DNA of 63,244 nucleotides, filler included, from Bigelowiella natans CCMP2755 (Eukaryota > Protista > Cercozoa): NCBI GenBank assembly GCA_000320545.1. It is 4 parts of 4 records of this genome, joined end to end, with 100 filler letters (N's around TTAATTAATTAA, not from the genome) between each part and the next. Parts side by side here need not be neighbours in the genome. Positions count along the whole stretch, not along the records: positions 24,437 to 40,695 come from ADNK01000031.1; 3 more parts are not named here. The stretch is one strand, 5' to 3'. Position numbers and translations under genes: made by a program. Shown in pieces: positions 24,437 through 40,695 of this stretch. The notes under the pieces are model-generated. The model had not been told where the DNA came from. It worked only from the letters and a program-made list of their open reading frames with translations, and did not search any database. Position 1 is the stretch's first letter. The number at the start of each line of letters is the position of its first letter.

Positions 24437-24603
24437 GCCAGCGATGAGACAAACAAACCAAGCCACGCATACAGACTATATATATATCTCACACACACGC
24501 GCGCGCGCACACACACACACACACACACGACAACATATTATATATATTAATCTGCACACTACTGCAGGGCCTCCTCATTTTCTTGTTCGGTTCATCAAGA
24601 TAC

Positions 24604-25129
24604 CTGTATTGCCTCGAAATTGATGAATGTTGGAAAGGCCAAGGAGCTCGTGAGAGCACGCTTTCGCAGCATACCTTCGTACGTGGTTAAGAACAAAATA
24701 AATAGAACAATCAACACTGAGACAAAGCCATTCCTTCTTCCAACATCCTTTTCCTTTCATCATTTATTTTGGTCGTTGTCGTAGTCGATGATCGTTCGAA
24801 AGGAAAGCCATCATTGTTGTTGCTAAAGAATTGAATTTATATATGTGTACGTTATATGCATGTGTGTATGTGTGTGCGTGCGCGCGCGCGCGCGCGTGTG
24901 TGTGTGATATTAATATTAAGTCTCTATGCTTGGCTTTTATGTTTTACTCATCGCTGCCAAAGAAACCATGGTGAGAGTCCACAGCAAATTTCCACATTAT
25001 ATTGTGACTTATGAACTTCTGTCCCCCTTTAATTATGATAATAATAATTATAATGATAATACTAAAAAAATCATAGATTCTGAGTACATTTAAGCTCTCG
25101 CTGAAGCATTTACACGTCCACACCCATCA

Positions 25130-25184
<55 letters not shown>

Positions 25185-27072
25185 ACTAGGTGCGCACGCG
25201 AAAAGATACCTGCTTGCCCCCCCATTTTTCTTGGATGTATTGTCTTGAGGGAAAGAGGAAGATGACGCTGAATAAGTAGAAAAACAGCATCTTAGAGAAT
25301 AACAATGAAACTACCATTGAGTGAAGAATAAACGCAATTGGAAATAGCAAAATTGAAATTATTATAAAGTCTTCGTAATGAAGTAAGAGGGGAAAGATCT
25401 TCAAAGTTGCTTTTGTTCAACTCGGTTTCGACTTGTTGTGTTTTGGATTGTTTGAACGACGGTACAAGACACAGTTACTACTTCCTGAATTATTATCTTC
25501 CCTATCGCTGTTGCGGTGTGGACAAAATCCTTCGCCAACTAAGAACAATGCCCATTGCAGGATCATCGTTTACAATTATGGAGTGATGATGGTGAGGTGA
25601 TGATATTTAGTCATGGTGATAGATAATCGTGATCACAAAAAGTAGTAATAGTAGTTGTAGTGGTAGTAGTAGCTAGGTAGTAGTAGTAGTAGTAGTAGTA
25701 GTACCTGAGCCAGTTCCGTGAATTCCCTCTCTTGCTCCAATATGTAGTCGTCCGTCATTGAATCCATCTACATATCACCCATCAAACGACGAGATCATCA
25801 TGGTTAAGGCAGCACGTGGCGATGAAGGTGTTGTTCGAAAAGAAACAGCAGCCAGCAGTAGGAAAGAGTTCTCCTCCTTCTTCTGCCTTCGCTCTATCCC
25901 GTACTACTGCCCCGAGGGGAATGCGTATATCTCCTCTAAATGCGGCGGTGCGGTGAGAAGAAGATGATTCGTGTTGTTGTCTGTCTGTCTGTCTCCTCAA
26001 AGGAGTCACCACCAGGCGCTGGAACTGCTCGTTCCATTCCCTGAGGCTCGCCATCGTCCTCTCCTCGACGTTCGTTCGCTCGACGGCTTGAGAGCAACGG
26101 CAGATTTCTGTTGGCGACAAGATAAAATAGCATGTCGCGCATGGAAAACAGGGCCATTTCTTGGAGATATTATTAGCCATCCGGAGTATTCCGGTGAGCG
26201 TACTCGAAGACTATCACCCTCCCCTCCCACCTCCCCCCCATTGCTTCCATGGGCGTAATTAGAGCTCGATATCGATAGAAGTCTGTCGAGAATGACCAAG
26301 GCATCCAGAAAATGGTGTTTTCTGGGAGACTGGGTAGGACGTGTTGATGTAAAAGAGGACGGCATTAGGAAACCACGTTCCGCCCCATCTCGGTTCCATT
26401 CCGACCGCATCCTTGTCATCCTCCACCTTCTCTCTCTCCTTCTTCCCCTGACCATCACAAAGGCTGAAAGCTACCCTATCGAAGGTACACAAGAGATCTG
26501 TCGAACAACTTGGTCTAGTAACGATTAGAGAACACATTACAATAACTGTATTTTATTCGTTTAAGTAGCCTCCCCCTCTCCGTTTTGACATTAATTTTGT
26601 AATCATAGTTTGTTCTCATTTCTACTATTTAATCAACACATAATAGAGCGACGAATAGACTCTTCCGACGGCAACGCTTACACCCGCCAGGTGATTGTTC
26701 CCTGATATTATTTCTCACCTATCTTCTTAGTAGTACCTAGCTACTCCCCCCTCCTCTGATTGATCAAATGAACCATTAATTCGAAAGGAATTCGTTGAGT
26801 ACTATGGTGGAGAAGATGAGTGGCAACGTAGTAGTAACCAAGTTTATGAGGCAGACAATCTTTTTGATGATGATGAAGATGATATCGATAGCCAGGACGT
26901 TGGTAAGAGCTTACCATATCACGAAGAAGAAGAAGAAGAAGAAGAAGAAGAATATTAGAATACTCGGCTAGCGAAAGCACACATACGTAAGCAGGAAGTT
27001 CGCATAGACGAAGTATGGGAACAGAATTTTATATGAATAAATATTGGTATATGATAACACACACACACACAC

Positions 27073-27115
<43 letters not shown>

Positions 27116-27896
27116 TGAGTTACACATTGTGGACCCACACCCGGATACAATTGACCATCCTGTGTGCATAACATCGTATTATTATTATAGTATCAGGTGG
27201 TGGTGGGAATCCCGGCGATGCAGAGGAGGAGGAGGAGGAGGATCAAATATTACGTCCTCTTTCTTCGTCAGTGTGGTCCTTGAATGATGACTTCGATTTA
27301 GAGCCAGAGAAGGTGCCAAGAAAGACAATCTGGGGTTATTGGGCCGACGGAGAGGCCAAAATGCCTGCATTCTACAAAATCTGCGTTGAAACCTGGAAGG
27401 TAAGATGAGGTTTCTGCTTTAGGACTGATTGTGTGTTTAATGGTTCGGGGATAGCTTGTGGAAAATAATACCATCGTATTGTCTATGTTCATCAACATCA
27501 CAATTGCTGCTAAGTTGGGAAAATAATAATTAGCGCCAAAATCCTTCATGGTATATCCGTATCCTGGACAAATCTTCTATTTCAAAGTAGGGTTGCTGTT
27601 ATATATACGTGGTTAATGCTATATGTACGTCGTTGATTATTAGTGGTGATATCTGCACTTCTTCTTTGGTGACTGATAAAGTGGTGACCTAGTATGACTA
27701 CCGATGTGCTCCTGTTCTTCTTCTTCTTCTTTTTCTTCTTCTTCTTCATTAGATACCTTTCCAGCATCGAATTACCACCTACAATCTACGATCTCCCACC
27801 CCACGGAGCAAGTGACCACGTAAGGTACACGAAACCAATGAGGAGGAGGAGGAGGACGAGGCTATGAAAGACTGCAAAAACAAACATCTAAATGTA

Positions 27897-27943
<47 letters not shown>

Positions 27944-28736
27944 ATGTGTCTATTATTCATGATAGTTGTTTGATGATGTGAAGATGATGGTGAACGTTGT
28001 TGATGGGGAGGTAGGCTGGCTTTGCTCGCGAAATACGGGGGTGTATGGATGGACGTGAGCATCATCCTTAGGTATATTGGTATTGCTGCTGGTGGAACAT
28101 AAGTAGTAGTAGTAGTAGTAGTAGTAGTTGTAGTAGTAGTGGTAGCAGCCGTAGTTTCATTCAAGTGTGTGCAAACGCAATGTTGTGCATCATCGTGACC
28201 TTATCATAACCTTTCTTTTCTGCACCAAGTTTCTCTTCTTTCCTTGTCCCTTCTTCTCCTTCTTCTTCTTCTTCATCATCATCCACACACCCCCCCCCCT
28301 TAAGGGAAAGTCTGGACACACTAGCATGGCAGCACATCGAACGGGGAGAAGTGCCTTTCGTAGGAATATATAATCCAGGTGCTAGCTGTTAATCCGTCAC
28401 TTTATGGTCCGGATGGAGACGGATAGGAGGGGGGGGGGGATTAACGTATCTCGCGGTGACAAATTTTGTTGGTTTTAACTACTGCGTTTCCACGCCGTTT
28501 GGGTGGTAATCAGTTTATGGCAGCAAGCACTTGGAGAACAAGGACTTCGTCGAAAGCTGGTTGTTAGTAGTAAAAGAGGAGTGCAGAAGACACTATGATA
28601 CGTACCGATTGGTCATCATAATATATAGTAGTATGTTGTAGTATTTAGTAGTGTTCCAATGCTTTTCCTATTCGCCTCTGTTAGGTTTCTGGCGACGGCA
28701 CGTCACAATCCATTTGTTTACAGGTAGGAACTTGAT

Positions 28737-28774
<38 letters not shown>

Positions 28775-30003
28775 AATATGTGTGAGTATATCTAGCATCA
28801 GCCTAGTAGCTATATTTGCAAAGGAGTTATCAACATCAGTGAAGTCTCATCGTGCACTGCTCTTTTCCTCACTCCATTAATGATCAATGTTTCGACGATG
28901 CATATGCCAGATGGCGCGACCTATTATCCCGCCTCTTCAAGTCTCGAACGACTTCTGGATTTGCTTCAAATTTGCTCACTGATCCTCTCTATGAAGTACT
29001 TACCACATTACTGCCGTGATGCAGTTGCAGCTGCTTGCTGCTTTGAATAATATATTTATGTATATTATCAATACACATATATTTGTGTGTGTGTGTGTGT
29101 GTGTATCTTGGTGTGCAGCAAATGAATTGGTAGGAGGAGGCAATTATGCGAGAGGCAATTATGCGAGAGTCATCATTTCATTCGTCGAGTAAATGAATGA
29201 TCATGTCACGAAGATGATAATGATTGATGAATTATGCGAATATGTTGCAATTTGATGCTTCGAAACAAGGGGTTGGATCTGTCCAATTTCTTAAGGGAAG
29301 GAGTCGATTTTAGGTACTAGAAAGTGGTGAAGAGAGGAGATCACCATGCATTTCTGTATTTTGATGTTATATATTTATAATTTGCAAAACAAGAAGTGAA
29401 TGATGGCCTTGCTTTTCAGAGAATATCTGGCAATACACGTGATGCTTCGAAGGTTAGCCATTATCTGTGTAAATATTATGGAGGCTTCACGCCTTTGCCG
29501 ATTCTCGTCGTTTGTTTTCATGTAAAAGATATACGCAAAAAACTTTTCAAAATGAATCAAACGAACCATGATGAGACGATGTATATATAATTTGCACATG
29601 CTTTTTCTCTACTGCCACTCATGCTAACTGAAACGGTGTACTGTACAACAACCACAGAATTTTAGAGAACGAATCAGACCTCAGGTCAAATTGAAAGGAA
29701 GAGTAAATGATATGGTGTATCATCATCATCATCAAGAGTGGAGGAGAATAATATGAAAGAGTATAACTAGGGTGACACATCCCTCTTCAAAAACAGCCCA
29801 ATCTGTGCTTCTTTTTTTATGATAATCTCTCAGAAGCATCGATGAGCTCTATCTATCATCACATTTTTTTAAAAAACTTGATAATCTTCCAGAAATAATA
29901 TCGAGCTTCTTCACTGTCACTTACAAACATGATACAGGTCTCAGTGGGAATCATGGAAGTTATACAGCACTGAAGATACAGGTTGAAAACATCGAAACGT
30001 TTG

Positions 30004-30079
<76 letters not shown>

Positions 30080-30420
30080 ACGCGCGCGCAGGACCTACGT
30101 GCGTATGGTAAACTCCGATGACATTAGGTTTTGTCTTGTTTCACAGGGTTACGATTGCAACGTAGGGTGGGAGATTGGGGTACGTACACCATATGGATCT
30201 TTATCGGCTCTGCGTTAAAATTGATGGTTTGCAACTGTTTTGTGACATCAAAATATAGGTATTTCTACGGTAGAGGCCCTTTTTAGGTATCAGTGAATAT
30301 TTATAATTTACCCCTTACAAGATATATTTCTTCACAGTGTGATAATCTTACTTACCAGCTCAGACGATGAAATCTGGAGAGACATCGCTAGTACACCTTT
30401 GATGAAGTTTACAACTCCTG
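24604..30420 (-). CDS. Clu-domain protein with long N-terminal region; 3' part lost at the gap; 5' extent uncertain
   Basis: Small exons in 24604-26090 splice to REWNEQFQRL...|LAKDFVHTATAIGKIIIQE|RHLPLSLKTIHPRKMGGQAG|GQKFISHNIMWKFAVDSHHGFFGSDE|YAAKACSHELLGL, matching Clu-domain motifs. Upstream exons are only tentatively assigned. Confidence 0.75.
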
Positions 30421-30920
30421 CGAACTCAATTTTGCAAAAGTGAGTGTATTCATTACATCCGTAGTTCAGATTTGTTGTTTCAGTTTTATACCTAGCTGGT
30501 GTGTAGACGTGACTGACTAGTTGATGTGGGATTTTGCGCGCAAACCGAACATTTAATTCGTAAAATATGAGTTGACGAACGCTCACAAACAAACAAAAAT
30601 TTTGGATTAAATTTTATTACATCATATAGGCTTCCGAGAGAGATGTTCTTCTCGAAAGGGACTTTGATTCAACGCATACTTAGTGAAATTGGGTTGGAAA
30701 AATGAAGTGTGCAGATTGCTGGATCAAAAGATAAAAAATCAAGCACAGTTACCACTTTATACAGCAGCATGCTAAAACCGAGTATTTCGATTGCCAATGC
30801 TATCGTAACACGTTTGCGGTTGCACGTTACGTATGTGTAAGCAAGCATATTCCGTCGAAGCAGAATACTTCTAGACCTATTTGTTACATGAGGCATCGCT
30901 TACATGTGCATGTCCATATG

Positions 30921-31062
30921 AGACGGATGTAAGACGGATGTACTGAATCAAATCAAATTTGTTCAATGGTCACTCTCATGTAACTGTGCAATGCAGCGGC
31001 TACAGCGCTAATGTTGAATCTGTTGGTCTCCGCTATGATGTGTTTCATGCAATCAAATGGAT
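30921..31062 (+). repeat. Dispersed element, copy 3 (long), with tandem AGACGGATGTA
   Basis: AGACGGATGTA twice, then CTGAATCAAATCAAATTTGTTCAATGGTCA and the tail shared with copy 2. Confidence 0.9.
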
Positions 31063-31435
31063 GTAGCTACGTTTTTTCAGTAGTTATCCTAATGTAGCGC
31101 TATGCAAAGCGGCATAGACAATGAGCGTAAAGGTAACATGAATGTGTGGCACGTAGCTGCAAATTTAAAAAATGGAACAGATCCATCAAGCTGCCATGAT
31201 GAAAGGTAGAATTTTGGTACAAAGCGTATTATATCATCTGCTTCACAATCTCATTATGCATCATTCTAGCATTTGTTTTCTGATTTAGTCTGCATCCCCT
31301 ATCAGAGTGCGGATTTGATTTCATCGATTTTCATTAGTTTATCTCTGATGACATCATACAAATTGAGATTCAGGGGTGAGTGTGTCTCATCCATCCTGAA
31401 CACCGCCTGGATTCTACATGGACAAGTTGCGACCA

Positions 31436-32319
31436 TCATCTACCAGCAAGGGACCTTAATTTTTTAACTTGTTTTTCAAGTTCCATGCAAAGAATATACA
31501 GTTCGTTGTTTGTGTACGCATAGTCCAGATATCTCCTCTCCGCATTGGCAATTTGCGGGGCAACAGCAAGCTGGAAAGTTATAAACATGTAATAAGTTTT
31601 CCTATTCAACAATCAACTTTTCGCGACATCGGATAACATCCACCTGTGAGGCTTTTCGTTTCCTGTTAATATCCTTGATCTCGGTCTTACTTCTTCCAAG
31701 ATTTTTGGACAGTCTGAGAAACCCGTGCAAGTATTAATTCTAATCTCTCATTGCCTCTTGTTTAGATGTTACATTTGCTGGATTTCTTCCATTTGATCCG
31801 CATATCCTTTCCACTTGTTGCTGCCATATCTTTTAAGGAGTTCAAGATTTATTATCCTAAGGAAAACAATATAACCATCAACCCTCAATTCGAAGAGATT
31901 ATAAATATCTTTAGACCGGGCTGTTTGATGCTCAAGCTGGGTTTGTGCCTTCTTTAAGGCCTCTTCCCAATCCGCGATATTAGAGGATTTTGGCGGTGTT
32001 ATTTTGTAACGGGATGCATCGAATGACATTTTAGGGGGAGCAGATTTGCGTTCGAACATATCTTTTACAATCACGCTTTCCTAAACATGAGAGGGGATGG
32101 TTAGTATCAATATTCATAACTTTGCATTTTTGCTGCTAAAACTTCGCTGACCCCTGCAACAGTGGGAATAGGCATGGACTTCAGATAATCTGGTGGTCGG
32201 AACGTCTTCATCTCCTCTTGGATAAGTTTTTCAACTTGTTTTCTTCTCTGTGGATCTTGATATTCATGGTCGATGTAGGGCAGTCCGTCCAGGACAACTT
32301 CATTGTCCGTAGTTTCCAT
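31436..32319 (-). CDS. SPF27: Pre-mRNA splicing factor SPF27/BCAS2
   Basis: LDGLPYIDHEY...VEKLIQEEM, FDASRY, WEEALKKAQTQLEHQTAR|IINLELLKRYGSNKWK, DINRKRKASQ; short introns. Confidence 0.92.
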
Positions 32320-32647
32320 TTTTGTGAGACATCTCTGGGTCTGGGAACAAAGGATGCTTTGTAATTATTTGTGAAGTTACTAGAACATCAAGTCTCTTAT
32401 GGGCAAACACGTTCTATTTGAACATTTTATTTTTTATGATCCTCGATTAAGTGCTGGAAATTAATCTCGTTTGGTTGCGGGAAATGTGAGTTTTCAGATC
32501 AAATCTGAAAAAAGGTTGTATCTAAAGTCAACGTATTTCTCTACCAAATATATAGACGACCTTTACATTACCTTGTCGTACTTGTATTTTGAAGCAAACG
32601 TGCCCAGCTTTCATTTACTCACCACAGGCCTTCCTTCAAACCACGCT

Positions 32648-32773
32648 ATGTCCGGTCTCAGCTACCTGCAGGACCAGGCTACTGCCTTCCCCGACCAGGA
32701 AGAACACTTCACGCAACTCTCCAACTTGTACAAGGATAGGTACAGTTCGACTGCATCCTATCCTCCCCTTTCT

Positions 32774-32816
<43 letters not shown>

Positions 32817-34381
32817 TCTATCCTTCTTCTTTCTCTCTCTCCCTCTCACTCTGTTCCCCCTCAGCATGAGAGCAAATCTAAATACTGAATACGTAAAAGT
32901 AATCTTTTGAATTTTTTCCTTATTGAGGCCGCACTCATCTTCAAATTTCCTTCAGGTTATGGTTCCAATTAACTGAAAAGCTGCTACAGCTTCTTTCCGT
33001 CCCGCATTTTCAAAAAGCTCCCCACCTACTCAACTTGTATCAAGAGTTTGTCAAGGGCTTCGAAAAAGACTTGAGCAAATTGGATCTAGCTCAGTTTGCT
33101 ATCGCGGCATCAAAGCAATGCGATGGTCGTTTTTGACTGCAACATCATACATACCATATATTCTAATTGTTAAAAATACAGATTTCAAAGAGACCATGAG
33201 CTTTCTGGACAAGGTCGCGGAAACTATGAAGGGAAACCCTCAAGCTGATGTTCTTTGCAAGATGGAAAAGGCTGAACTTCAAATAAAAGCATGTGATAAC
33301 CCTGACGAATTGCATTCATCGGTCGAGGCTAACATTGAAGAGGGCAAGAGCGCTATGGATAAGTTTGAGGGCATAATGGATCCTGTGGTGCACTCCTCTT
33401 ACTATCGTGTAAAATTTTTCTTTCATAAGGTAACATCATATGTACGTGTCATTACTGTGTACTGAAGAATTATTTATGCCGGCAGAAAAAGAAACAAGCC
33501 AGCGAAGTCTTTCGACATGCGTTACTATATCTATCCTATACACCAATCGACAAGATTCCGAGCACCGAGAGAGTGGAGTTTGCCTACGATGTTTCAATGG
33601 CTGCTCTGATTGGAAAAGATATATTCAACTTTGGTGAATTGGTAGCTGATACCAGATTATTTTGTTTCCTAAGGAAGAGATTTACTGATATCGTGTGATT
33701 GCAGCTTGAACGGCCACTAGTCAAAGTACTTGACGATAGCAAATACTCCTCAACGCTTAAGCTTCTTGAAGCGTTTCACAATGGAGACATTAAAACATAT
33801 GAAGATATCATGGCAAAGGATGGGAAAGCACAGGTAGGAACAGATTATGCATTGATTTCTTTAATGGTGATGCGATCAGTACCGATTTTTTTGTTCAGCC
33901 CTTACTCCAAGCTAATAAAAAGTTCCTGTCGATGAAAGTACGAATATTGCGTCTAATGGGGACGGTATTCAGTCGATCTTCTCGAGATAGGGCTTTGTCT
34001 TTCAAGGAGATCTCTGATGCTTGTGATACGAAGATCGATGAGGTAATGATTCATTTTGAGAATCTTGGTTGGATGTTACATTCTGAGATGACTTGGCGGT
34101 AGGTGGAATTCCTTGTTATGAAATCATTCTCATTGGGAGTGTTGAAAGGGATCGTTGACCAGGTAATTTCATGTGATTACTGTGTGTCACAATGTTCTGA
34201 TGAAGGGTTTTGCGTTGATTTGTCATAGGTTGCGCAATCCGTAAATATTAAATGGGTTCAACCAAGAGTGCTTACAAAAGGCCAGATAAAAAATATGGGA
34301 GATCGTCTCAAGGTATGGACTGCAGAGTTAAGCAAAGCAACTGCACATGTCGAAGAACACAGCAAAGAGATTTTGCAATAA
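32648..34381 (+). CDS. RPN9: 26S proteasome lid subunit RPN9/PSMD13
   Basis: LYKDR|LWFQLT, LYQEFV, VHSSYY, ALLYLSYT, AALIGKDIFNFGEL, VEFLVMKSFSLGVLKGIVDQ|V, WVQPRVL; TAA at 34379-34381. Confidence 0.95.
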
Positions 34382-35259
34382 TTGTTGCATGCAGTCCGCA
34401 GTTTTCCCTCCACGGATTTCCACGCTCGTACATCATTACCTGTCGTGATGGAATTATTAACGTCATTTGGTAATTACAGTGGGCTTGTTGGTTACAGAGC
34501 GATGATCATTTCATCTTGTTGCAACATGCTAGCATGCTAGCATGGTGTGCACTTGCTAGCTTGCGGCATGCTAACATAGCATGCTCTCTAGCTCTGCTGC
34601 TATGCTAGTGCTGCAAACTCATCGCACCGCGACAGGCTGCTACGCTCTAGTGCTAGCAGGCATCCATCTACTAACTACTAACTATGCTATGTGCACACAT
34701 CTGTAAAACATCAACCGCGCAGATGCGAGCAATTTGATTAGCTCTGGGTAGAGCTAGAGAGCTTGCCAAACATCTAGACATGCTAGCATGCATGCGTGTC
34801 GATCGAAGCGCATGGCTGTGACAACAAGCTCAACTAGTCAACAACGTGCTAGTGTGCGCTGTGTAGATGGTGCGACCTAGCAAATTGAAACATCTAGCTA
34901 GACATCGACATGCCGGCCATGGTGAGATGTGTGCAGTTGCACTTTGTTTGCACGCAATGCAAGCTGTGTGGAGTGCTGCCTGCTGCTGCGGCAGCGAGCT
35001 AGATGATGGATATCTGCGGTAGAGACAGAGAGGGACTCCATTATCTTTGGACAATGGGGATCCTCTCTTTGTTTCTTCCTCACGTACTACAGACATGAAC
35101 TTTGTCATTTGCATTTTTGCTCCCCGGCCACCACCATTCATGCGCGTGTTTCAGTGCGATGTAGAGCTGATGATGCAAACATGCAAACTTGTTTTGTCCT
35201 CACTGCAGACTCAACTTGCGACTTTCCGACTCTACGGTCCATTGTTCAAACTTCATGAA

Positions 35260-36812
35260 CTAGCTATGAATTTGACTTGCCACATTGTGTGCTGCCATCC
35301 TCCAGTCCATTTTCTTTTGTGTGACAGGGAGCTTTCGTCGCATCTTCTTGAATGCAGACTGGGCGAGTTGTATGTACATTTCCTCCATACTCGACTGTGA
35401 CATGATCATTACAAATGAGATCAGATGTTGTAATATTATGAGCGTCTACCAACTAACTACACCTGATATTCAGATTCGATATTTTCGATTGCCTTGAGTA
35501 GTGCTTTGGCCGTGGATACTGCCTCTCCCTAAAATGATTCATTTTTCTAAGTTTAAGTCTCTCATTTCACTACAGGCCATAATGTAAATACCACGTCCAC
35601 ACTTGAGGTCTTTTTTTCTAACTTAGACACTAATTGCACATTGCCGTCCTCGAAACAATGAACACGGGCCTTAACTACGCCCGCTATATTTGTAGATCCT
35701 TTAGAAGCAACATTCAGAGTATACTTTGATGTCCATCCCCCACTCCTGTAAAAATTTAATATTTAATAAGAACTTCATTTCTGCAGCAAAGAGATAAATT
35801 ATCCCTTACCAAAATGAAGCCAAAATTTTGGAGTTGATAGCAGAGATACACACATTTATGTCTCCATCGTCGTTCGCATATACTCCAACAGCATGTTTTT
35901 TCGTTACTCGAGGAGCTTGCCTGAGATTGTATGCTGAATCTAAATATTTCTTCGCCTCTGCGGCAATCGCAGCCCTGTATTCTTCGTATTTGCCCGATGG
36001 AGGCGTGTCGCCAGTAACTTCAAACCCCTGATTGGGAAAAAGAGTTCATAAGGTTCAACTATTTTAACAATCGTGCTAAATGACTAACCGAGTCTTTGAA
36101 GTTCGCTTGCACAACCCTGTTATTGATCGGGTCGAAATATTTACCGTCCCCGAGGTGACCGTGTTCGCAAAACATTGCCTAAAAATTTGAGACGAAAGAT
36201 TCAGAGAGAGGCTAAATGTCTACTAAAATTAATTAACCGGCTTTCCATCAGCATCTCCAATCACAAAGTTGTCTTCATTGTGTTTCTTCATTATCAAGTT
36301 AAGATTCTTCTCGTCTAGAATGGATGGATCCCCGACAAGCTTCTTGACATCTAATTCCATCCGTTTTCCATCAGCGTGGTTAGATTATTTACAACAAGAA
36401 CTGAATCGGTCTACGTAATAACCTGTAACCAGGAAATCCACTTCACCGGGAGGAGCCTGGGTGATAAAATAGCTTGCAATCTGAAACTTTTCCTCAGGGG
36501 AGGCCTGTAAGCGAGAAGGTTTAATTCGTAGGAATCTAAATTACGGCACAATGATTGAACCTCCTCTTCTTCATCTTCCTCATCATCACCGCTCCCGCCT
36601 CTAAGATTGGCAGCCATTGTTACGGTAGCTTCATTTTTGAGGGATTCACCGACAATGTCTTCATTGCTTAAGGGTTTCCCATTTGCTAGGATGCTCATTT
36701 GTCTAGCTCCAGTCATGTCAGTCAATTTGACTTTGAGATCTCCAACTGTTTGATCAGGCAGGATGTCCACCGTGTAAATCTGGCCGCTGGTGTCAGTGAA
36801 GTAAATCTGCAT
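35260..36812 (-). CDS. CAPZA: Ubiquitin-like domain (ending LRGG) fused to F-actin capping protein alpha subunit
   Basis: Exon 36812-36561 encodes MQIYFTDTSGQIYTVDI...TVGDLKVKL...ANLRGG-SGDDEEDEEEE and splices in phase 0 to ASPEEKFQIASYFITQAPPGEV. Later exons give FWSGGW, VHCFEDGNVQL, IESEYQ and FKKMRRKLPVTQKKMDW. Confidence 0.9.
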
Positions 36813-37803
36813 AATAAGGATCGTCCTGGCAAAGAAAGAACGAAGAGAAAAGAAATTGAGCTATGCTCTTCTCCATGTCATATTATACAGTTCGACGAAG
36901 CAATAGACACCCCCACATTGATAGTAAACCATTTATAGGTAATCTTGCAGAAGAAGTCAGTATCCATGCACAGCCACACACCCAAGCTTCCCTCCCTTAC
37001 TCTACCCACGGATCCACACCTGAAAGGAAAGAACTAGCTTTGTCAGCAGAAAAATTGCAATTAATGGTTCATTTTTTCCTATCTAGACGGACAGAATATG
37101 AGAGCGACTACGATTTACATATACAGTACAAGAAAATAGTAATTTCTTCCTCAATAGCCTTTATTTCATACTCTGAAATGTCATTCACTGGCAATTAATC
37201 AGAATTATGAGGGATATTCCCCACATGAACTCTCTGAAATATCAATAATTTTTCAAGAAGCATGATGTCTTTGATGTCATTTTTATTATGAAACTCCGAT
37301 TTCAGGATAAATTCTTGCTACAGTAAAATCTTACTGCCGCAAATCTCAAGATATCAGAATCGAATATTTAGTTCCCTGCAGCCGAGATGAGTTCATGCAT
37401 GAGTACCTTGTCGAAGGCCATAAATGAAAGGGCATTCTGGACGTTACTCTAAACGAAATCTTGCAGTGGCAATACCAGATAACGACATAAAAACTTGCCT
37501 ACTTTTGATTTAAATGCCCACGAGTTGGTACGAGTATAAGCACGCTCCTCGTAACTGAAGCAGCAGCCCGTTGAGTAGTATTCATATCAGATCCACATCA
37601 GTATCCATATCGTCAGTTGTTTAACGTCGAGCACAGTTCCCCGTTGCCTACTCTCTCCGTCTTCGTGGAACACTGCAGAAAGGAGGCTTTTTCGGAACGG
37701 AAGAAATGGCAAAATTTATTGACTAAATGAATGAGGCCCAATCTGTAAAAGGCTTTTCTATACAGCTCGCACGATATACGTATTGAATAAGTGATTTTGG
37801 AAA

Positions 37804-38256
37804 ATGGAAGGCTTTCTCGAAAAGAAACCTAGTTTTGGGTTCGGTTGGCAGCAACGATACTTTCGTTTATGGAGGAAATCTCTCACATATACGAAGAAAC
37901 GAAATGACAAAAACGCAACCGAGCTTCGAATAGAAGATGACAAGGAGATAAAGGTTCGTGACATTGTCTGCACAAAGGTAATGGAAATGAAAATGGAAAT
38001 ATGTTGTATATTAGGTTCGGATAGATAAGCAAGATAACAGAGTCTTCTATGTCACTATCGACAAGGACATGCGCTTACGCGCGCCAAACGGTCTGTCTAA
38101 ATATTATTATCATTATGTTTTTATATCCACCATGTGAACGAATGGTACCCCATAACTCCTCGTAGTCATTTAATTTACAAGTTGATACCTCACAATTGTA
38201 AATATATACACGTATACATGTACTCTATATGCATGCATGTATTACGTGTCCCTCTA

Positions 38257-38304
<48 letters not shown>

Positions 38305-39090
38305 CTGTTGCACGCGTTTGTGTGTGTGTGTGTGTGTGTGTGTTTGTTTCTGAATTTGTGTGTTGTCCTCACCCTTAGAATCCATGAGGAATCTCTGGGT
38401 AGATTTGTTGGAGTCTTTCACACAGATTCCTCGGCGGCTTCCCCCAGCTCTTCGTCTCGCAGCTATGGGGGCCATTTCCCATCTTCGACTGCATGCTCTT
38501 GTTGTGTCGGAGCTCTTTGTGAAGAAAGGTGATGAGGATCGCGTGACCAAGGTGAAGTTGGCACTACTTAATTCAGCACAGAATCTAGAATCGCCAGTAG
38601 GAAGCGGGAAGGTTCTGGTTCCACGTGGTTCAAATCCCTACGATGTAGCTACTGCGTTGGTTTCGCTGCTGAAGGTTATTCCAGGGGGGGGAATCTTAGC
38701 TCCTAAGAAAGTACGCAAGGCGATAACAAAAGCTAAGGATAAGCATTCCCTTCGTGGGGCACTCAAAGAGCTCCCCGAGGACAACCTGCTAATGGTAGAA
38801 GCTCTGGCGAAGCTTTTCACCGAACTCAAAAACAGTCCAGCTTCATCGGCAGCAGTGTCGAATCTAAATCACGCAACTGCTGCCCTAGCACAGGTCTCTG
38901 AGTCCAAGAGACAGAACGGCAGTGTTGACAGGCTAACAGGTTTGTTGTCAACCGAGGCCGATTTTTTGTTTTCGCATCGAAAGGGCGGCGCCTTTGGTGG
39001 AAAAGAAGAGCTCGAACATGAGACGGAAATACACAATCCGAACAAGAACGAAGACTCCATAGATGAGAATCTCGAAGGGTATAGTTGCAT

Positions 39091-39165
<75 letters not shown>

Positions 39166-39446
39166 AGTGATCGTGTGTGGCTTGTTTATTCATATGCTCG
39201 TCGTCAGGTTTGATGCAGAAGACACAGAGGATAACTATGTAAAGAGAAAAAGAGAAGAACGGGAAAGTCGGCAGCTTGAGGACAAGAAAAGGTATCTCCA
39301 GCGATAATACATGTTGTATATCTTTTGTTTTGGGTTATTGTGTGGGTGAGACAACCAACATGTTGTTGTATCTTTTGATGGACATATATGTGTGTAAGCT
39401 ACTCCTCCATTTTGGAGGTTTCCTTCCATCTGTTCACGCTAGATTG

Positions 39447-39482
<36 letters not shown>

Positions 39483-40317
39483 GCGCGCACGCACGCAAAG
39501 GCATAACTATGTATCTTTACAGAGAAATGGAGAAGATCAGGCTGAGAGAGCAGAAAAAAATGGAGAGACGTAAACTTGAAGAAGAAGAGGAGAGAAGGCA
39601 ACTAGAAAGAGAACAGGAAATGGAACAACAGCGACAGAAAAAGGAAGAAGAGGAGAAACGAAAGGAACAGCAGGTATTTTGAATTGCCTTCCAATAAACG
39701 AAGAAATAGCTGCACTTACTTAGTAGCGAGGAGAATATGTCTAAAGTTTTTCCCTGAAAGTTTTGTAATACGTGGGAGCGAAGCAATGATCGACACGAAT
39801 TGAGCAGTTGTGTTCAGCTGTTTGGTTGATCAGAAAAACTAATCATAATAATATGGTTGCTTCTATTCTTATCCTTCTAAGCCCCTTCTCCCTCCTACCA
39901 TCTCAACCTCCCCTCCACCACAATAAAGAGAATATGTGACACACACAACCTTTAGGAGGAGAAGAGTGGTAACAAATACAATCCAGAACCATCAGAGTTT
40001 GGTTTCTCAGAGCTTGACGTAAGGACTCAAGCCTATATATATATGATATATATATATATATATATATATATAAACACATATTATAATGTGTCTATATGTG
40101 TGTGTGTGTGTGTGTGCGTGTGTCTGTTTAATTTCACATTATGATGTAAATGTTCCCCCAGCTGAGTGGCGATATCGACGGTGATGATTTGGCCGACATG
40201 CTCATGGAAGATGATGAGGCACCGGAAAATAAGGTATGATGTATCTTTCTTCTTCTTCATTTGATATAGGATCATTATTTAGTTTTGAAGGGGTAATTGA
40301 ACACATAATATATCTAT

Positions 40318-40374
<57 letters not shown>

Positions 40375-40380
40375 TATATA

Positions 40381-40414
<34 letters not shown>

Positions 40415-40695
40415 AATATTGATTTACATGCAAAACAGTGCTTTCAAGTTGAACCCACCATGCTGCCACGTGGGCGGCGCGTGTAGACTTATATGCTCAT
40501 GACGCTACTCTTCGTTGTACACCATAGATAAAAAAGACGCTATATATTTGTGGAACCAACATACTAACCGGCCATACCCCCTTTGTCCATGTAGGCAACC
40601 AAACAAAAATCTATTACTACTCCCACGTCGGGTGACGGGCGTGGGGAAACTACTACGAAACCGAACACGGAAACTACGTCGTCAGAGGCTAATGG
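37804..40695 (+). CDS. PH domain + RhoGAP-like domain + coiled-coil protein; 3' end cut by the gap
   Basis: MEGFLEKKPSFGFGWQQRYFRL...MRLRAPN|ESMRNLWVDLL (PH), then HLRLHALVVSELFVKKG, PYDVATALVSLLK and LKELPEDNLLMVEAL (RhoGAP-like helices), then an E/K/R-rich coil. Confidence 0.75.

What the first reader, a model, noticed from the sequence alone, without database searches (positions are those of the whole stretch)
35260..36812. Ubiquitin-like domain fused N-terminally to actin capping protein alpha
Seen: a 73-aa ubiquitin-like domain (MQIYF...LRGG) runs, within one exon, into SGDDEEDEEEE and then splices in frame into a complete CapZ-alpha. Known: CapZ-alpha normally has no UBL; ubiquitin-actin and ubiquitin-P1 fusions are described in chlorarachniophytes; cercozoan polyubiquitins carry 1-2 extra residues such as S or SG after LRGG. 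Inference: this is a cleavable fusion. The UBL is far from ubiquitin yet keeps LRGG, like FUBI, so it may be a distinct modifier or folding chaperone made 1:1 with capping protein. Cleavage would expose an acidic, actin-like N-terminus. With ubiquitin-actin this hints at a UBL-fusion expression system for the actin cytoskeleton. I do not know of a description of this fusion.
Basis: partly seen in the sequence, partly recalled or inferred. Interest (0 to 1): 0.85.

Follow-up and report, generated by a model that had tools for sequence, protein, structure and literature searches.

The report
Known ubiquitin-like–capping protein alpha fusion
The fused gene is real, expressed and conserved in chlorarachniophyte algae, but it is Bigelowiella natans gene 84922, whose ubiquitin–capping protein alpha fusion was already published in 2019.

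Summary
An 8-coding-exon gene on the minus strand runs from the ATG at 36812 to the stop at 35262-35260 and encodes 369 aa. The parts are a 73-aa ubiquitin-like domain ending in LRGG, the acidic stretch SGDDEEDEEEE, and a full-length CapZ-alpha.

RNA contigs from three studies carry the whole spliced mRNA. A further 5'UTR intron shows that the UBL exon is an internal exon.

All eight exon peptides are exact substrings of the public protein jgi/Bigna1/84922 of Bigelowiella natans. Sibbald et al. 2019 (BMC Genomics 20:38, Table 1 and text) list exactly this protein as an N-terminal ubiquitin fusion to F-actin capping protein alpha.

New here:
- The fusion is also present in Lotharella oceanica, in Amorphochlora amoebiformis (all seven coding-intron positions identical) and in an intronless metagenome-assembled relative.
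- The UBL is only 28-39% identical to ubiquitin in every lineage.
- It diverges about twice as fast as CapZ-alpha, yet is under purifying selection (dN/dS about 0.06 in one pair).
- Gly-Gly-Ser at the junction is invariant.

Cleavage after GG is the most likely mechanism. It is inferred, not shown.

The parts
37020..37034 (-). 3' end of an upstream non-coding 5'UTR exon; its true start lies further upstream and was not mapped
   Evidence: The loose 5' letters of RNA contigs X2 and X3 match uniquely at 37034-37023, followed by CAG|GT.
36826..37019 (-). 5'UTR intron, 194 nt, GT..AG
   Evidence: The contigs join 37020 to 36825, with the letters CAG shared by both sides.
36594..36812 (-). Ubiquitin-like domain, 73 aa, Met1 to LRGG
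   Evidence: Pfam ubiquitin 24.6 bits. Against PDB ubiquitin 23.9 bits, E 3.5e-4, end-to-end alignment. 28% identity to ubiquitin. Predicted secondary-structure order is that of a beta-grasp.
36561..36593 (-). Acidic stretch SGDDEEDEEEE, corresponding to the acidic N-terminus of CapZ-alpha; the putative cleavage site GG|S is at 36594/36593
   Evidence: pLDDT is below 50 for residues 61-83. Residue 80 aligns with residue 3 of 1izn_A.
36505..36560 (-). Coding intron 1, 56 nt, GT..AG, phase 0, no ATG
   Evidence: RNA contigs leave exactly 30 letters between 36593 and 36506, which fits only the spliced form. The same intron position is found in Amorphochlora.
35260..36504 (-). CapZ-alpha coding part: exons 36504-36423, 36350-36238, 36178-36089, 36027-35810, 35745-35592, 35528-35463 and 35394-35260 (stop TAG 35262-35260), separated by introns of 59-72 nt
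   Evidence: The joints are listed in three RNA contigs. Exon peptides are exact substrings of P0162. P0162 scores 195.4 bits on F-actin_cap_A and E 4e-39 to chicken CapZ alpha-1 1izn_A.
35132..35259 (-). 3'UTR, with a poly(A) site near 35149
   Evidence: 25 raw RNA reads carry a loose poly-T before 35149 on the + strand. Contig ends lie at 35132-35156.

Best explanation
This is the Bigelowiella natans nuclear gene for JGI protein 84922. [quoted passage not shown] Shown: the fusion exists in the genome and in the mRNA, it is conserved across chlorarachniophytes, and the UBL is under purifying selection in one species pair. Inferred: the precursor is cut after the invariant Gly-Gly by a ubiquitin-type C-terminal hydrolase. 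That would release CapZ-alpha starting at Ser-Gly-(Asp/Glu)n together with a free UBL. By analogy with ubiquitin-L40, ubiquitin-S27a and FUBI-S30, the UBL would act as a transient N-terminal pro-domain, aiding yield, folding or assembly, or delaying activity, rather than as bona fide ubiquitin.
For: Identity: P0162 is jgi/Bigna1/84922, also EukProt Bigelowiella_natans P000413. All 8 exon peptides of the window are exact substrings of it, and the lengths agree at 369 aa. It is published as a ubiquitin-F-actin capping protein alpha fusion. Transcript: three RNA contigs from three studies cover the 5'UTR, the UBL, CapZ-alpha and the poly(A) site. The UBL exon is flanked by spliced introns on both sides. 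Conservation: the same architecture occurs in a second Bigelowiella-like transcriptome (P0160), in Lotharella oceanica (P0164, with P0152), in Amorphochlora amoebiformis (P0166) and in a metagenome-assembled relative (P0168), where it is one uninterrupted 1113-nt ORF. All seven coding-intron positions are shared with Amorphochlora. Cleavage inference: between lineages the UBL is 29-43% identical and CapZ-alpha 62-72%, yet G-G-S at the junction is invariant. The region around the junction is predicted to be disordered. dN/dS of the UBL is 0.06 against 0.09 for CapZ-alpha in the Lotharella pair, so the domain is maintained and is not a relic.
Against: There is no protein-level evidence of cleavage; the one proteomics paper checked does not mention capping protein. 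Residues that ubiquitin hydrolases and the E1 enzyme normally read are changed: Leu8 to Thr, Val70 to Ala, His68 to Thr, Arg42 to Ser and Arg72 to Asn. In other lineages LRGG becomes MKGG or VRGG. The domain could therefore stay attached. Contigs cannot exclude a minor transcript that starts inside exon 1 and uses Met65.
Confidence: 0.6

Rival explanations
1. The UBL is not removed. It is a permanent N-terminal domain of CapZ-alpha and serves as an interaction module, for example for ubiquitin-binding or proteasome-linked partners, as in Rad23- or parkin-type integral UBLs.
For: The hydrophobic patch, Arg72 and Arg42 are lost, and Leu73-Arg74 is replaced by Met-Lys in two lineages, so the junction may be a poor hydrolase substrate. 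The UBL is under purifying selection, as expected for a working domain.
Against: Integral UBLs generally lack a C-terminal di-glycine, by established knowledge. Here Gly-Gly-Ser is among the few invariant positions in a domain that is otherwise 29-43% identical between lineages. The junction lies in a stretch predicted to be flexible, directly before the native N-terminus of CapZ-alpha.
Confidence: 0.25
2. The released UBL is a distinct conjugatable modifier of the chlorarachniophyte lineage, made in a 1:1 ratio with capping protein.
For: The C-terminal GG is kept and the domain is under purifying selection.
Against: The sequence changes very fast between lineages. Lys48 is not conserved, being Arg in three lineages. 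Among 1.84 billion representative proteins only two were close to the query, the gene's own mis-model and P0003, which is itself an UBL-CapZ-alpha fusion; no stand-alone copy appeared. No dedicated E1 or E2 enzyme is known.
Confidence: 0.1
3. The fusion is a gene-model or assembly artefact that joins two separate genes.
For: None was found. The only mis-model seen is P0001, a 131-aa database entry that reads through retained intron 1.
Against: The spliced RNA contigs come from three studies. CapZ-alpha has no ATG of its own. Orthologous fusions occur in four other taxa, including an intronless single ORF.
Confidence: 0.02

Closest known systems
Ubiquitin-F-actin capping protein alpha fusion of Bigelowiella natans (JGI 84922; Sibbald, Hopkins, Filloramo & Archibald 2019, BMC Genomics 20:38)
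   Same: It is the same gene: 369 aa, and all exon peptides are identical.
   Different: Nothing differs in the object. The paper calls the N-terminal part a 'ubiquitin domain'. In the text held here it does not comment on its divergence from ubiquitin, on its presence in other chlorarachniophyte genera, or on the junction.
Ubiquitin-actin and ubiquitin-P1 fusions of chlorarachniophytes (Archibald, Teh & Keeling 2003, J Mol Biol 328:771, as cited)
   Same: An N-terminal ubiquitin-type domain sits directly in front of a cytoskeletal or ribosomal protein, in the same lineage, presumably as a cleaved precursor.
   Different: According to Sibbald et al., B. natans ubiquitin fusions mostly carry ubiquitin identical or nearly identical to polyubiquitin, through concerted evolution. 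The CapZ-alpha UBL is only 28% identical to ubiquitin and has escaped that process. I did not retrieve the actin fusion sequences myself.
FUBI-eS30 (FAU) and ubiquitin-eL40/eS31 precursors
   Same: A small N-terminal beta-grasp domain ending in Gly-Gly, translated in frame with a structural protein. FUBI is likewise a diverged, non-ubiquitin UBL that is cleaved off. This rests on established knowledge and was not tested here.
   Different: The partner here is an actin-filament capping subunit, not a ribosomal protein. Processing has not been demonstrated.
Rhizarian polyubiquitin with Ser or two-residue insertions between monomers (Archibald 2003; Bass 2005; PMC12930898)
   Same: The GG here is followed by Ser or Ser-Gly, like the inter-monomer junction of cercozoan polyubiquitin.
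   Different: This gene has a single diverged UBL, not a ubiquitin repeat. Descent of the SG from a polyubiquitin junction is only a conjecture.

Membership tests
[quoted passage not shown] | Score above the Pfam gathering threshold over the whole domain | tested here: met
   P0162 scores 195.4 bits (cutoff 24.2), residues 94-358 against profile positions 1-254 of 263. The window's exons match colinear parts of the profile.
[quoted passage not shown] | Full-length similarity to a solved CapZ-alpha, including the N-terminus | tested here: met
   1izn_A (chicken CapZ alpha-1), E 4e-39; query residues 80-358 align with chain residues 3-273 of 286.
[quoted passage not shown] | Forms a heterodimer with the beta subunit and caps barbed ends | not testable with these tools
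   This needs biochemistry.
Ubiquitin proper (Pfam PF00240, canonical ubiquitin) | Pfam gathering threshold reached | tested here: not met
   The B. natans domain scores 24.6 bits alone and 21.4 bits within the whole protein, against a cutoff of 25.4. The orthologues P0168 and P0166 do pass, at 44.9 and 46.4 bits.
Ubiquitin proper (Pfam PF00240, canonical ubiquitin) | Near-identity to ubiquitin, with the Leu8/Ile44/Val70 patch, Arg72, Lys48 and Lys63 | tested here: not met
   28% identity; Leu8 to Thr, Val70 to Ala, His68 to Thr, Arg72 to Asn, Lys63 to Asn. Lys48 is kept in B. natans but is Arg in other lineages.
Ubiquitin-like beta-grasp superfamily | Beta-grasp order of secondary structure, with end-to-end alignment to ubiquitin | tested here: met
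   Query residues 1-73 align with ubiquitin residues 1-76, E 3.5e-4. The predicted order is strand-strand-helix-strand-strand-short helix-strand, with block-mean pLDDT 63-87 for residues 1-60. No fold search was run.
Cleavable N-terminal ubiquitin/UBL fusion precursors (Ub-eL40, Ub-eS31, FUBI-eS30, chlorarachniophyte Ub-actin) | The UBL starts at Met1 and ends in Gly-Gly directly before the partner's N-terminus, in one mRNA | tested here: met
Cleavable N-terminal ubiquitin/UBL fusion precursors (Ub-eL40, Ub-eS31, FUBI-eS30, chlorarachniophyte Ub-actin) | Proteolytic release of the partner after Gly-Gly | not testable with these tools
   There is only indirect support: G-G-S is invariant in an otherwise fast-evolving domain.

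The most novel reading that the evidence does not exclude
The N-terminal domain is not ubiquitin but a chlorarachniophyte-specific, FUBI-like pro-domain. It was fused to CapZ-alpha before the chlorarachniophyte radiation, is kept under purifying selection with an invariant Gly-Gly-Ser cleavage junction, and is dedicated to the maturation or assembly of capping protein. It would then belong to a lineage-wide habit of making actin-cytoskeleton proteins as UBL precursors. The published account treats it simply as one more ubiquitin fusion in B. natans.
Probability: 0.4. Interest if true: 0.45.

Novelty: already known. Interest (0 to 1): 0.22.

Why it matters
The fusion itself has been in the literature since 2019, so it is not a discovery. 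Three modest points go beyond the paper:
- The fusion is ancestral to several chlorarachniophyte genera, with conserved intron positions.
- Its UBL has left the ubiquitin sequence family far behind while keeping only the di-glycine junction.
- In B. natans automated Pfam annotation misses the UBL, so similar fusions may go unnoticed elsewhere.

If cleavage were shown, it would be a rare non-ribosomal example of a FUBI-like pro-domain. It would also offer a handle on how these amoeboflagellate algae regulate capping of actin filaments.

Tried and rejected
- The intron-1 joint was not listed by read laying because the GAA/GAG-rich stretch 36559-36592 was masked. I used the record coordinates instead: 30 letters lie between the flanking pieces in all three contigs, which fits only the spliced form.
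- The raw RNA run X21 is a 3'-tag library. It says nothing about the 5' end beyond strand and poly(A) site.
- The B. natans proteomics paper (PMC3542566) does not mention capping protein or 84922. The supplement of Sibbald et al. held as text has no hit for 84922.
- Synteny: Amorphochlora and the metagenome relative share a divergently oriented WD40 (CAF1C-like) neighbour. tblastn of that protein and of the GH32 neighbour found nothing in the window.
- Whether CapZ-beta is also fused could not be tested, because I had no referenced CapZ-beta sequence and did not type one from memory. Table 1 of Sibbald et al. lists no beta-subunit fusion.
- I did not build or submit a joined translation of the window's exons. 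The window was searched exon by exon by reference and compared exon by exon. Whole-protein steps used the stored public protein P0162.
- The only joining done in a script was 5'UTR DNA, to look for an upstream in-frame stop.
- No fold search was run, as sequence evidence sufficed.

Full report
**Observation**

The region was read on the minus strand. An ATG at 36812 opens a 252-nt exon. Its first 73 codons encode a ubiquitin-like domain running from MQIYF to LRGG, and the next 11 codons encode SGDDEEDEEEE.

A GT at 36560 and an AG at 36505 bound a 56-nt intron. Exon 2 (36504-36423) continues in phase 0 with ASPEEKFQIASYFITQAPPGE. Six further exons follow, separated by GT..AG introns of 59-72 nt, and end at TAG 35262-35260. 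The coding sequence is 1110 nt, 369 aa.

Intron 1 and exon 2 contain no ATG. An in-frame TAG precedes ATG 36812 whether or not the 5'UTR intron is removed. CapZ-alpha can therefore be made in full only through the UBL reading frame.

Pfam was run exon by exon, by reference:
- Exon 1 matches ubiquitin (PF00240) at 24.6 bits, E 2e-5, just below the 25.4-bit cutoff.
- Exons 4, 5, 6 and 8 match successive parts of F-actin_cap_A (PF01267).

**Transcript evidence**

The gene region is held by runs from six studies of one organism. The share of sampled words held, 0.52-0.61, is what exon-only sequence would give.

Contigs from three studies were laid on 34900-37300. Each gave one contig (1252, 1243 and 1245 nt) running from the 5'UTR (36826/36828) to the 3' end (35132-35156). 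Six intron joints are listed explicitly.

The joint for intron 1 lies in a masked low-complexity stretch. In all three contigs exactly 30 letters lie between the pieces ending at 36593 and 36506. That count fits only removal of 36560-36505, with two letters (AG) shared by both sides. The X1 contig length equals the sum of the modelled exons: 266+82+113+90+218+154+66+263 = 1252.

A raw 3'-tag RNA run places the poly(A) site near 35149 on the minus strand.

The 8-12 loose letters at the 5' end of the X2 and X3 contigs match uniquely at 37034-37023, next to a CAG|GT donor. This reveals a 194-nt 5'UTR intron (37019-36826). The UBL exon is thus an internal exon spliced on both sides, and no joint that skips it was reported. 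Contigs cannot exclude rare alternative starts.

**Identity**

A HMMER scan with the 73-aa UBL against 1.84 billion representative proteins returned two close matches:
- P0001 is a 131-aa mis-model of this gene that reads through intron 1.
- P0003 is a 252-aa partial UBL-CapZ-alpha fusion whose UBL is 79% identical to this one.

All other matches were polyubiquitins at 24-36% identity.

A word-based search with P0003 and a cluster look-up found P0162, which is 369 aa. It is named jgi/Bigna1/84922 and EukProt EP00466_Bigelowiella_natans_P000413. All eight exon peptides of the window are exact substrings of P0162. The window is therefore Bigelowiella natans, and this gene encodes JGI protein 84922.

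**Prior description**

[quoted passage not shown] They discuss it together with the ubiquitin-actin fusions as a hint of cytoskeletal regulation.

A further full-text search found no other paper on it.

**What can be added**

The same architecture is present in several relatives:

| Protein | Source |
|---|---|
| P0160 | a second Bigelowiella-like transcriptome |
| P0164 | Lotharella oceanica (UniRef A0A7S2U4A8) |
| P0152 | a close relative of P0164 |
| P0166 | Amorphochlora amoebiformis (GAB5358867.1) |
| P0168 | a metagenome-assembled relative |

- In Amorphochlora the genomic gene has eight coding exons, with all seven intron positions identical to those of B. natans. This includes the phase-0 intron right after the acidic stretch.
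- In the metagenome relative the fusion is one uninterrupted 1113-nt ORF. That excludes any splicing artefact.
- CapZ-alpha homologues at 40% identity or less (271-295 aa) are unfused. Within the reach of these searches, the fusion is confined to the chlorarachniophyte clade.

**Nature of the UBL**

Every lineage's UBL is only 28-39% identical to ubiquitin. In B. natans the key substitutions are Leu8 to Thr, Arg42 to Ser, Lys63 to Asn, His68 to Thr, Val70 to Ala and Arg72 to Asn.

| Comparison | UBL | CapZ-alpha |
|---|---|---|
| Identity between lineages | 29-43% | 62-72% |
| Identity, B. natans vs P0160 | 79% | 93% |
| dN/dS, Lotharella pair | 0.06 | 0.09 |

For the dN/dS values, dS is near 1, so they are rough.

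The positions invariant in the UBL are a few structural residues plus Gly-Gly-Ser at the junction. LRGG becomes MKGG or VRGG in other lineages. The domain is therefore maintained, is not ubiquitin, and keeps the di-glycine junction.

AlphaFold2 on the nine-sequence alignment gave these results:
- The UBL has a beta-grasp order of secondary structure, with block-mean pLDDT 63-87 for residues 1-60.
- Residues 61-83 around the junction have low confidence.
- Most of the CapZ-alpha body is confidently predicted, though the C-terminal residues 336-369 have pLDDT below 50.

The acidic stretch aligns with the native CapZ-alpha N-terminus. Residue 80 aligns with residue 3 of 1izn_A, and unfused relatives begin M-SEEEFEQ. 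It is not a new linker.

**Mechanism**

The most likely mechanism, at about 0.6, is a precursor cut after Gly-Gly by a ubiquitin-type hydrolase. This would give CapZ-alpha starting at Ser-Gly-(Asp/Glu)n and a free UBL that acts as a transient pro-domain, as in ubiquitin-eL40, ubiquitin-eS31 and FUBI-eS30. The comparison rests on established knowledge of those families.

The inference rests on the invariant junction and its flexible context. No protein data exist.

The main rival, at about 0.25, is a permanently attached UBL, favoured by the loss of residues that hydrolases usually read. A conjugatable lineage-specific modifier is less likely, at about 0.1. The sequence changes fast between lineages, Lys48 is not conserved, and no stand-alone copy was found. 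An artefact is excluded.

**Limits**

- CapZ-beta was not examined, because no referenced query was available.
Whole-protein analyses used the stored public protein P0162.

**Verdict**

This is a real, expressed and conserved fusion that was already published. The added observations are incremental. Interest is low.

Noticed in passing
window 36826-37080: The gene has a 194-nt 5'UTR intron (37019-36826). A tiny upstream ORF (ATG at 37072, MNH-stop) lies in the presumed 5' exon, which holds only if transcription starts upstream of it. Low-depth contigs (X1 36809-36977, X2 36867-37080) cover the intron and probably come from unspliced pre-mRNA.
   Followed up: partly
L002:3001-4113 and L003:3001-4113: A metagenome-assembled relative (ENA ERZ23491500 scaffold_1553; NCBI GCA_977009605.1) carries the UBL-CapZ-alpha fusion as a single intronless ORF in a compact, seemingly intron-poor neighbourhood. 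It may be an uncultured relative of the chlorarachniophytes.
   Followed up: partly
L001:1529-2855 and L002:1498-2766: A WD40 (CAF1C/RbAp48-like) gene lies divergently upstream of the fusion gene in both Amorphochlora and the metagenome relative. tblastn found no trace of it in the B. natans window.
   Followed up: yes
protein P0001 (131 aa) and precomputed Pfam of P0151: Public collections hold a mis-model of this gene that reads through retained intron 1. The precomputed Pfam annotation of the B. natans protein cluster lists only PF01267, because the UBL scores below the ubiquitin cutoff. Automated annotation therefore misses the fusion.
   Followed up: yes
window 24437-40695: The piece is rich in di- and trinucleotide microsatellites (AG, TC, TG, TA, CT, AGT, GAA; 26 TRF rows). 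Several of them produce spurious long ORFs such as SLSLSL or TTTTT runs.
   Followed up: no
window 31772-32074 (-), 33118-33462 (+), 38360-39304 (+): Neighbouring ORF fragments match BCAS2 (63 bits, a spliceosome Prp19-complex component), PSD13_N (25.1 bits, below the cutoff of 27; proteasome Rpn9-like) and, weakly, RhoGAP (18.8 bits, below the cutoff). They are probably exons of flanking genes and were not modelled.
   Followed up: no
P0162 versus P0151, residue 79: B. natans transcriptomes hold a variant with SGDDDEDEEEE instead of SGDDEEDEEEE in the acidic stretch. This is a single Glu/Asp difference between strains or alleles.
   Followed up: no
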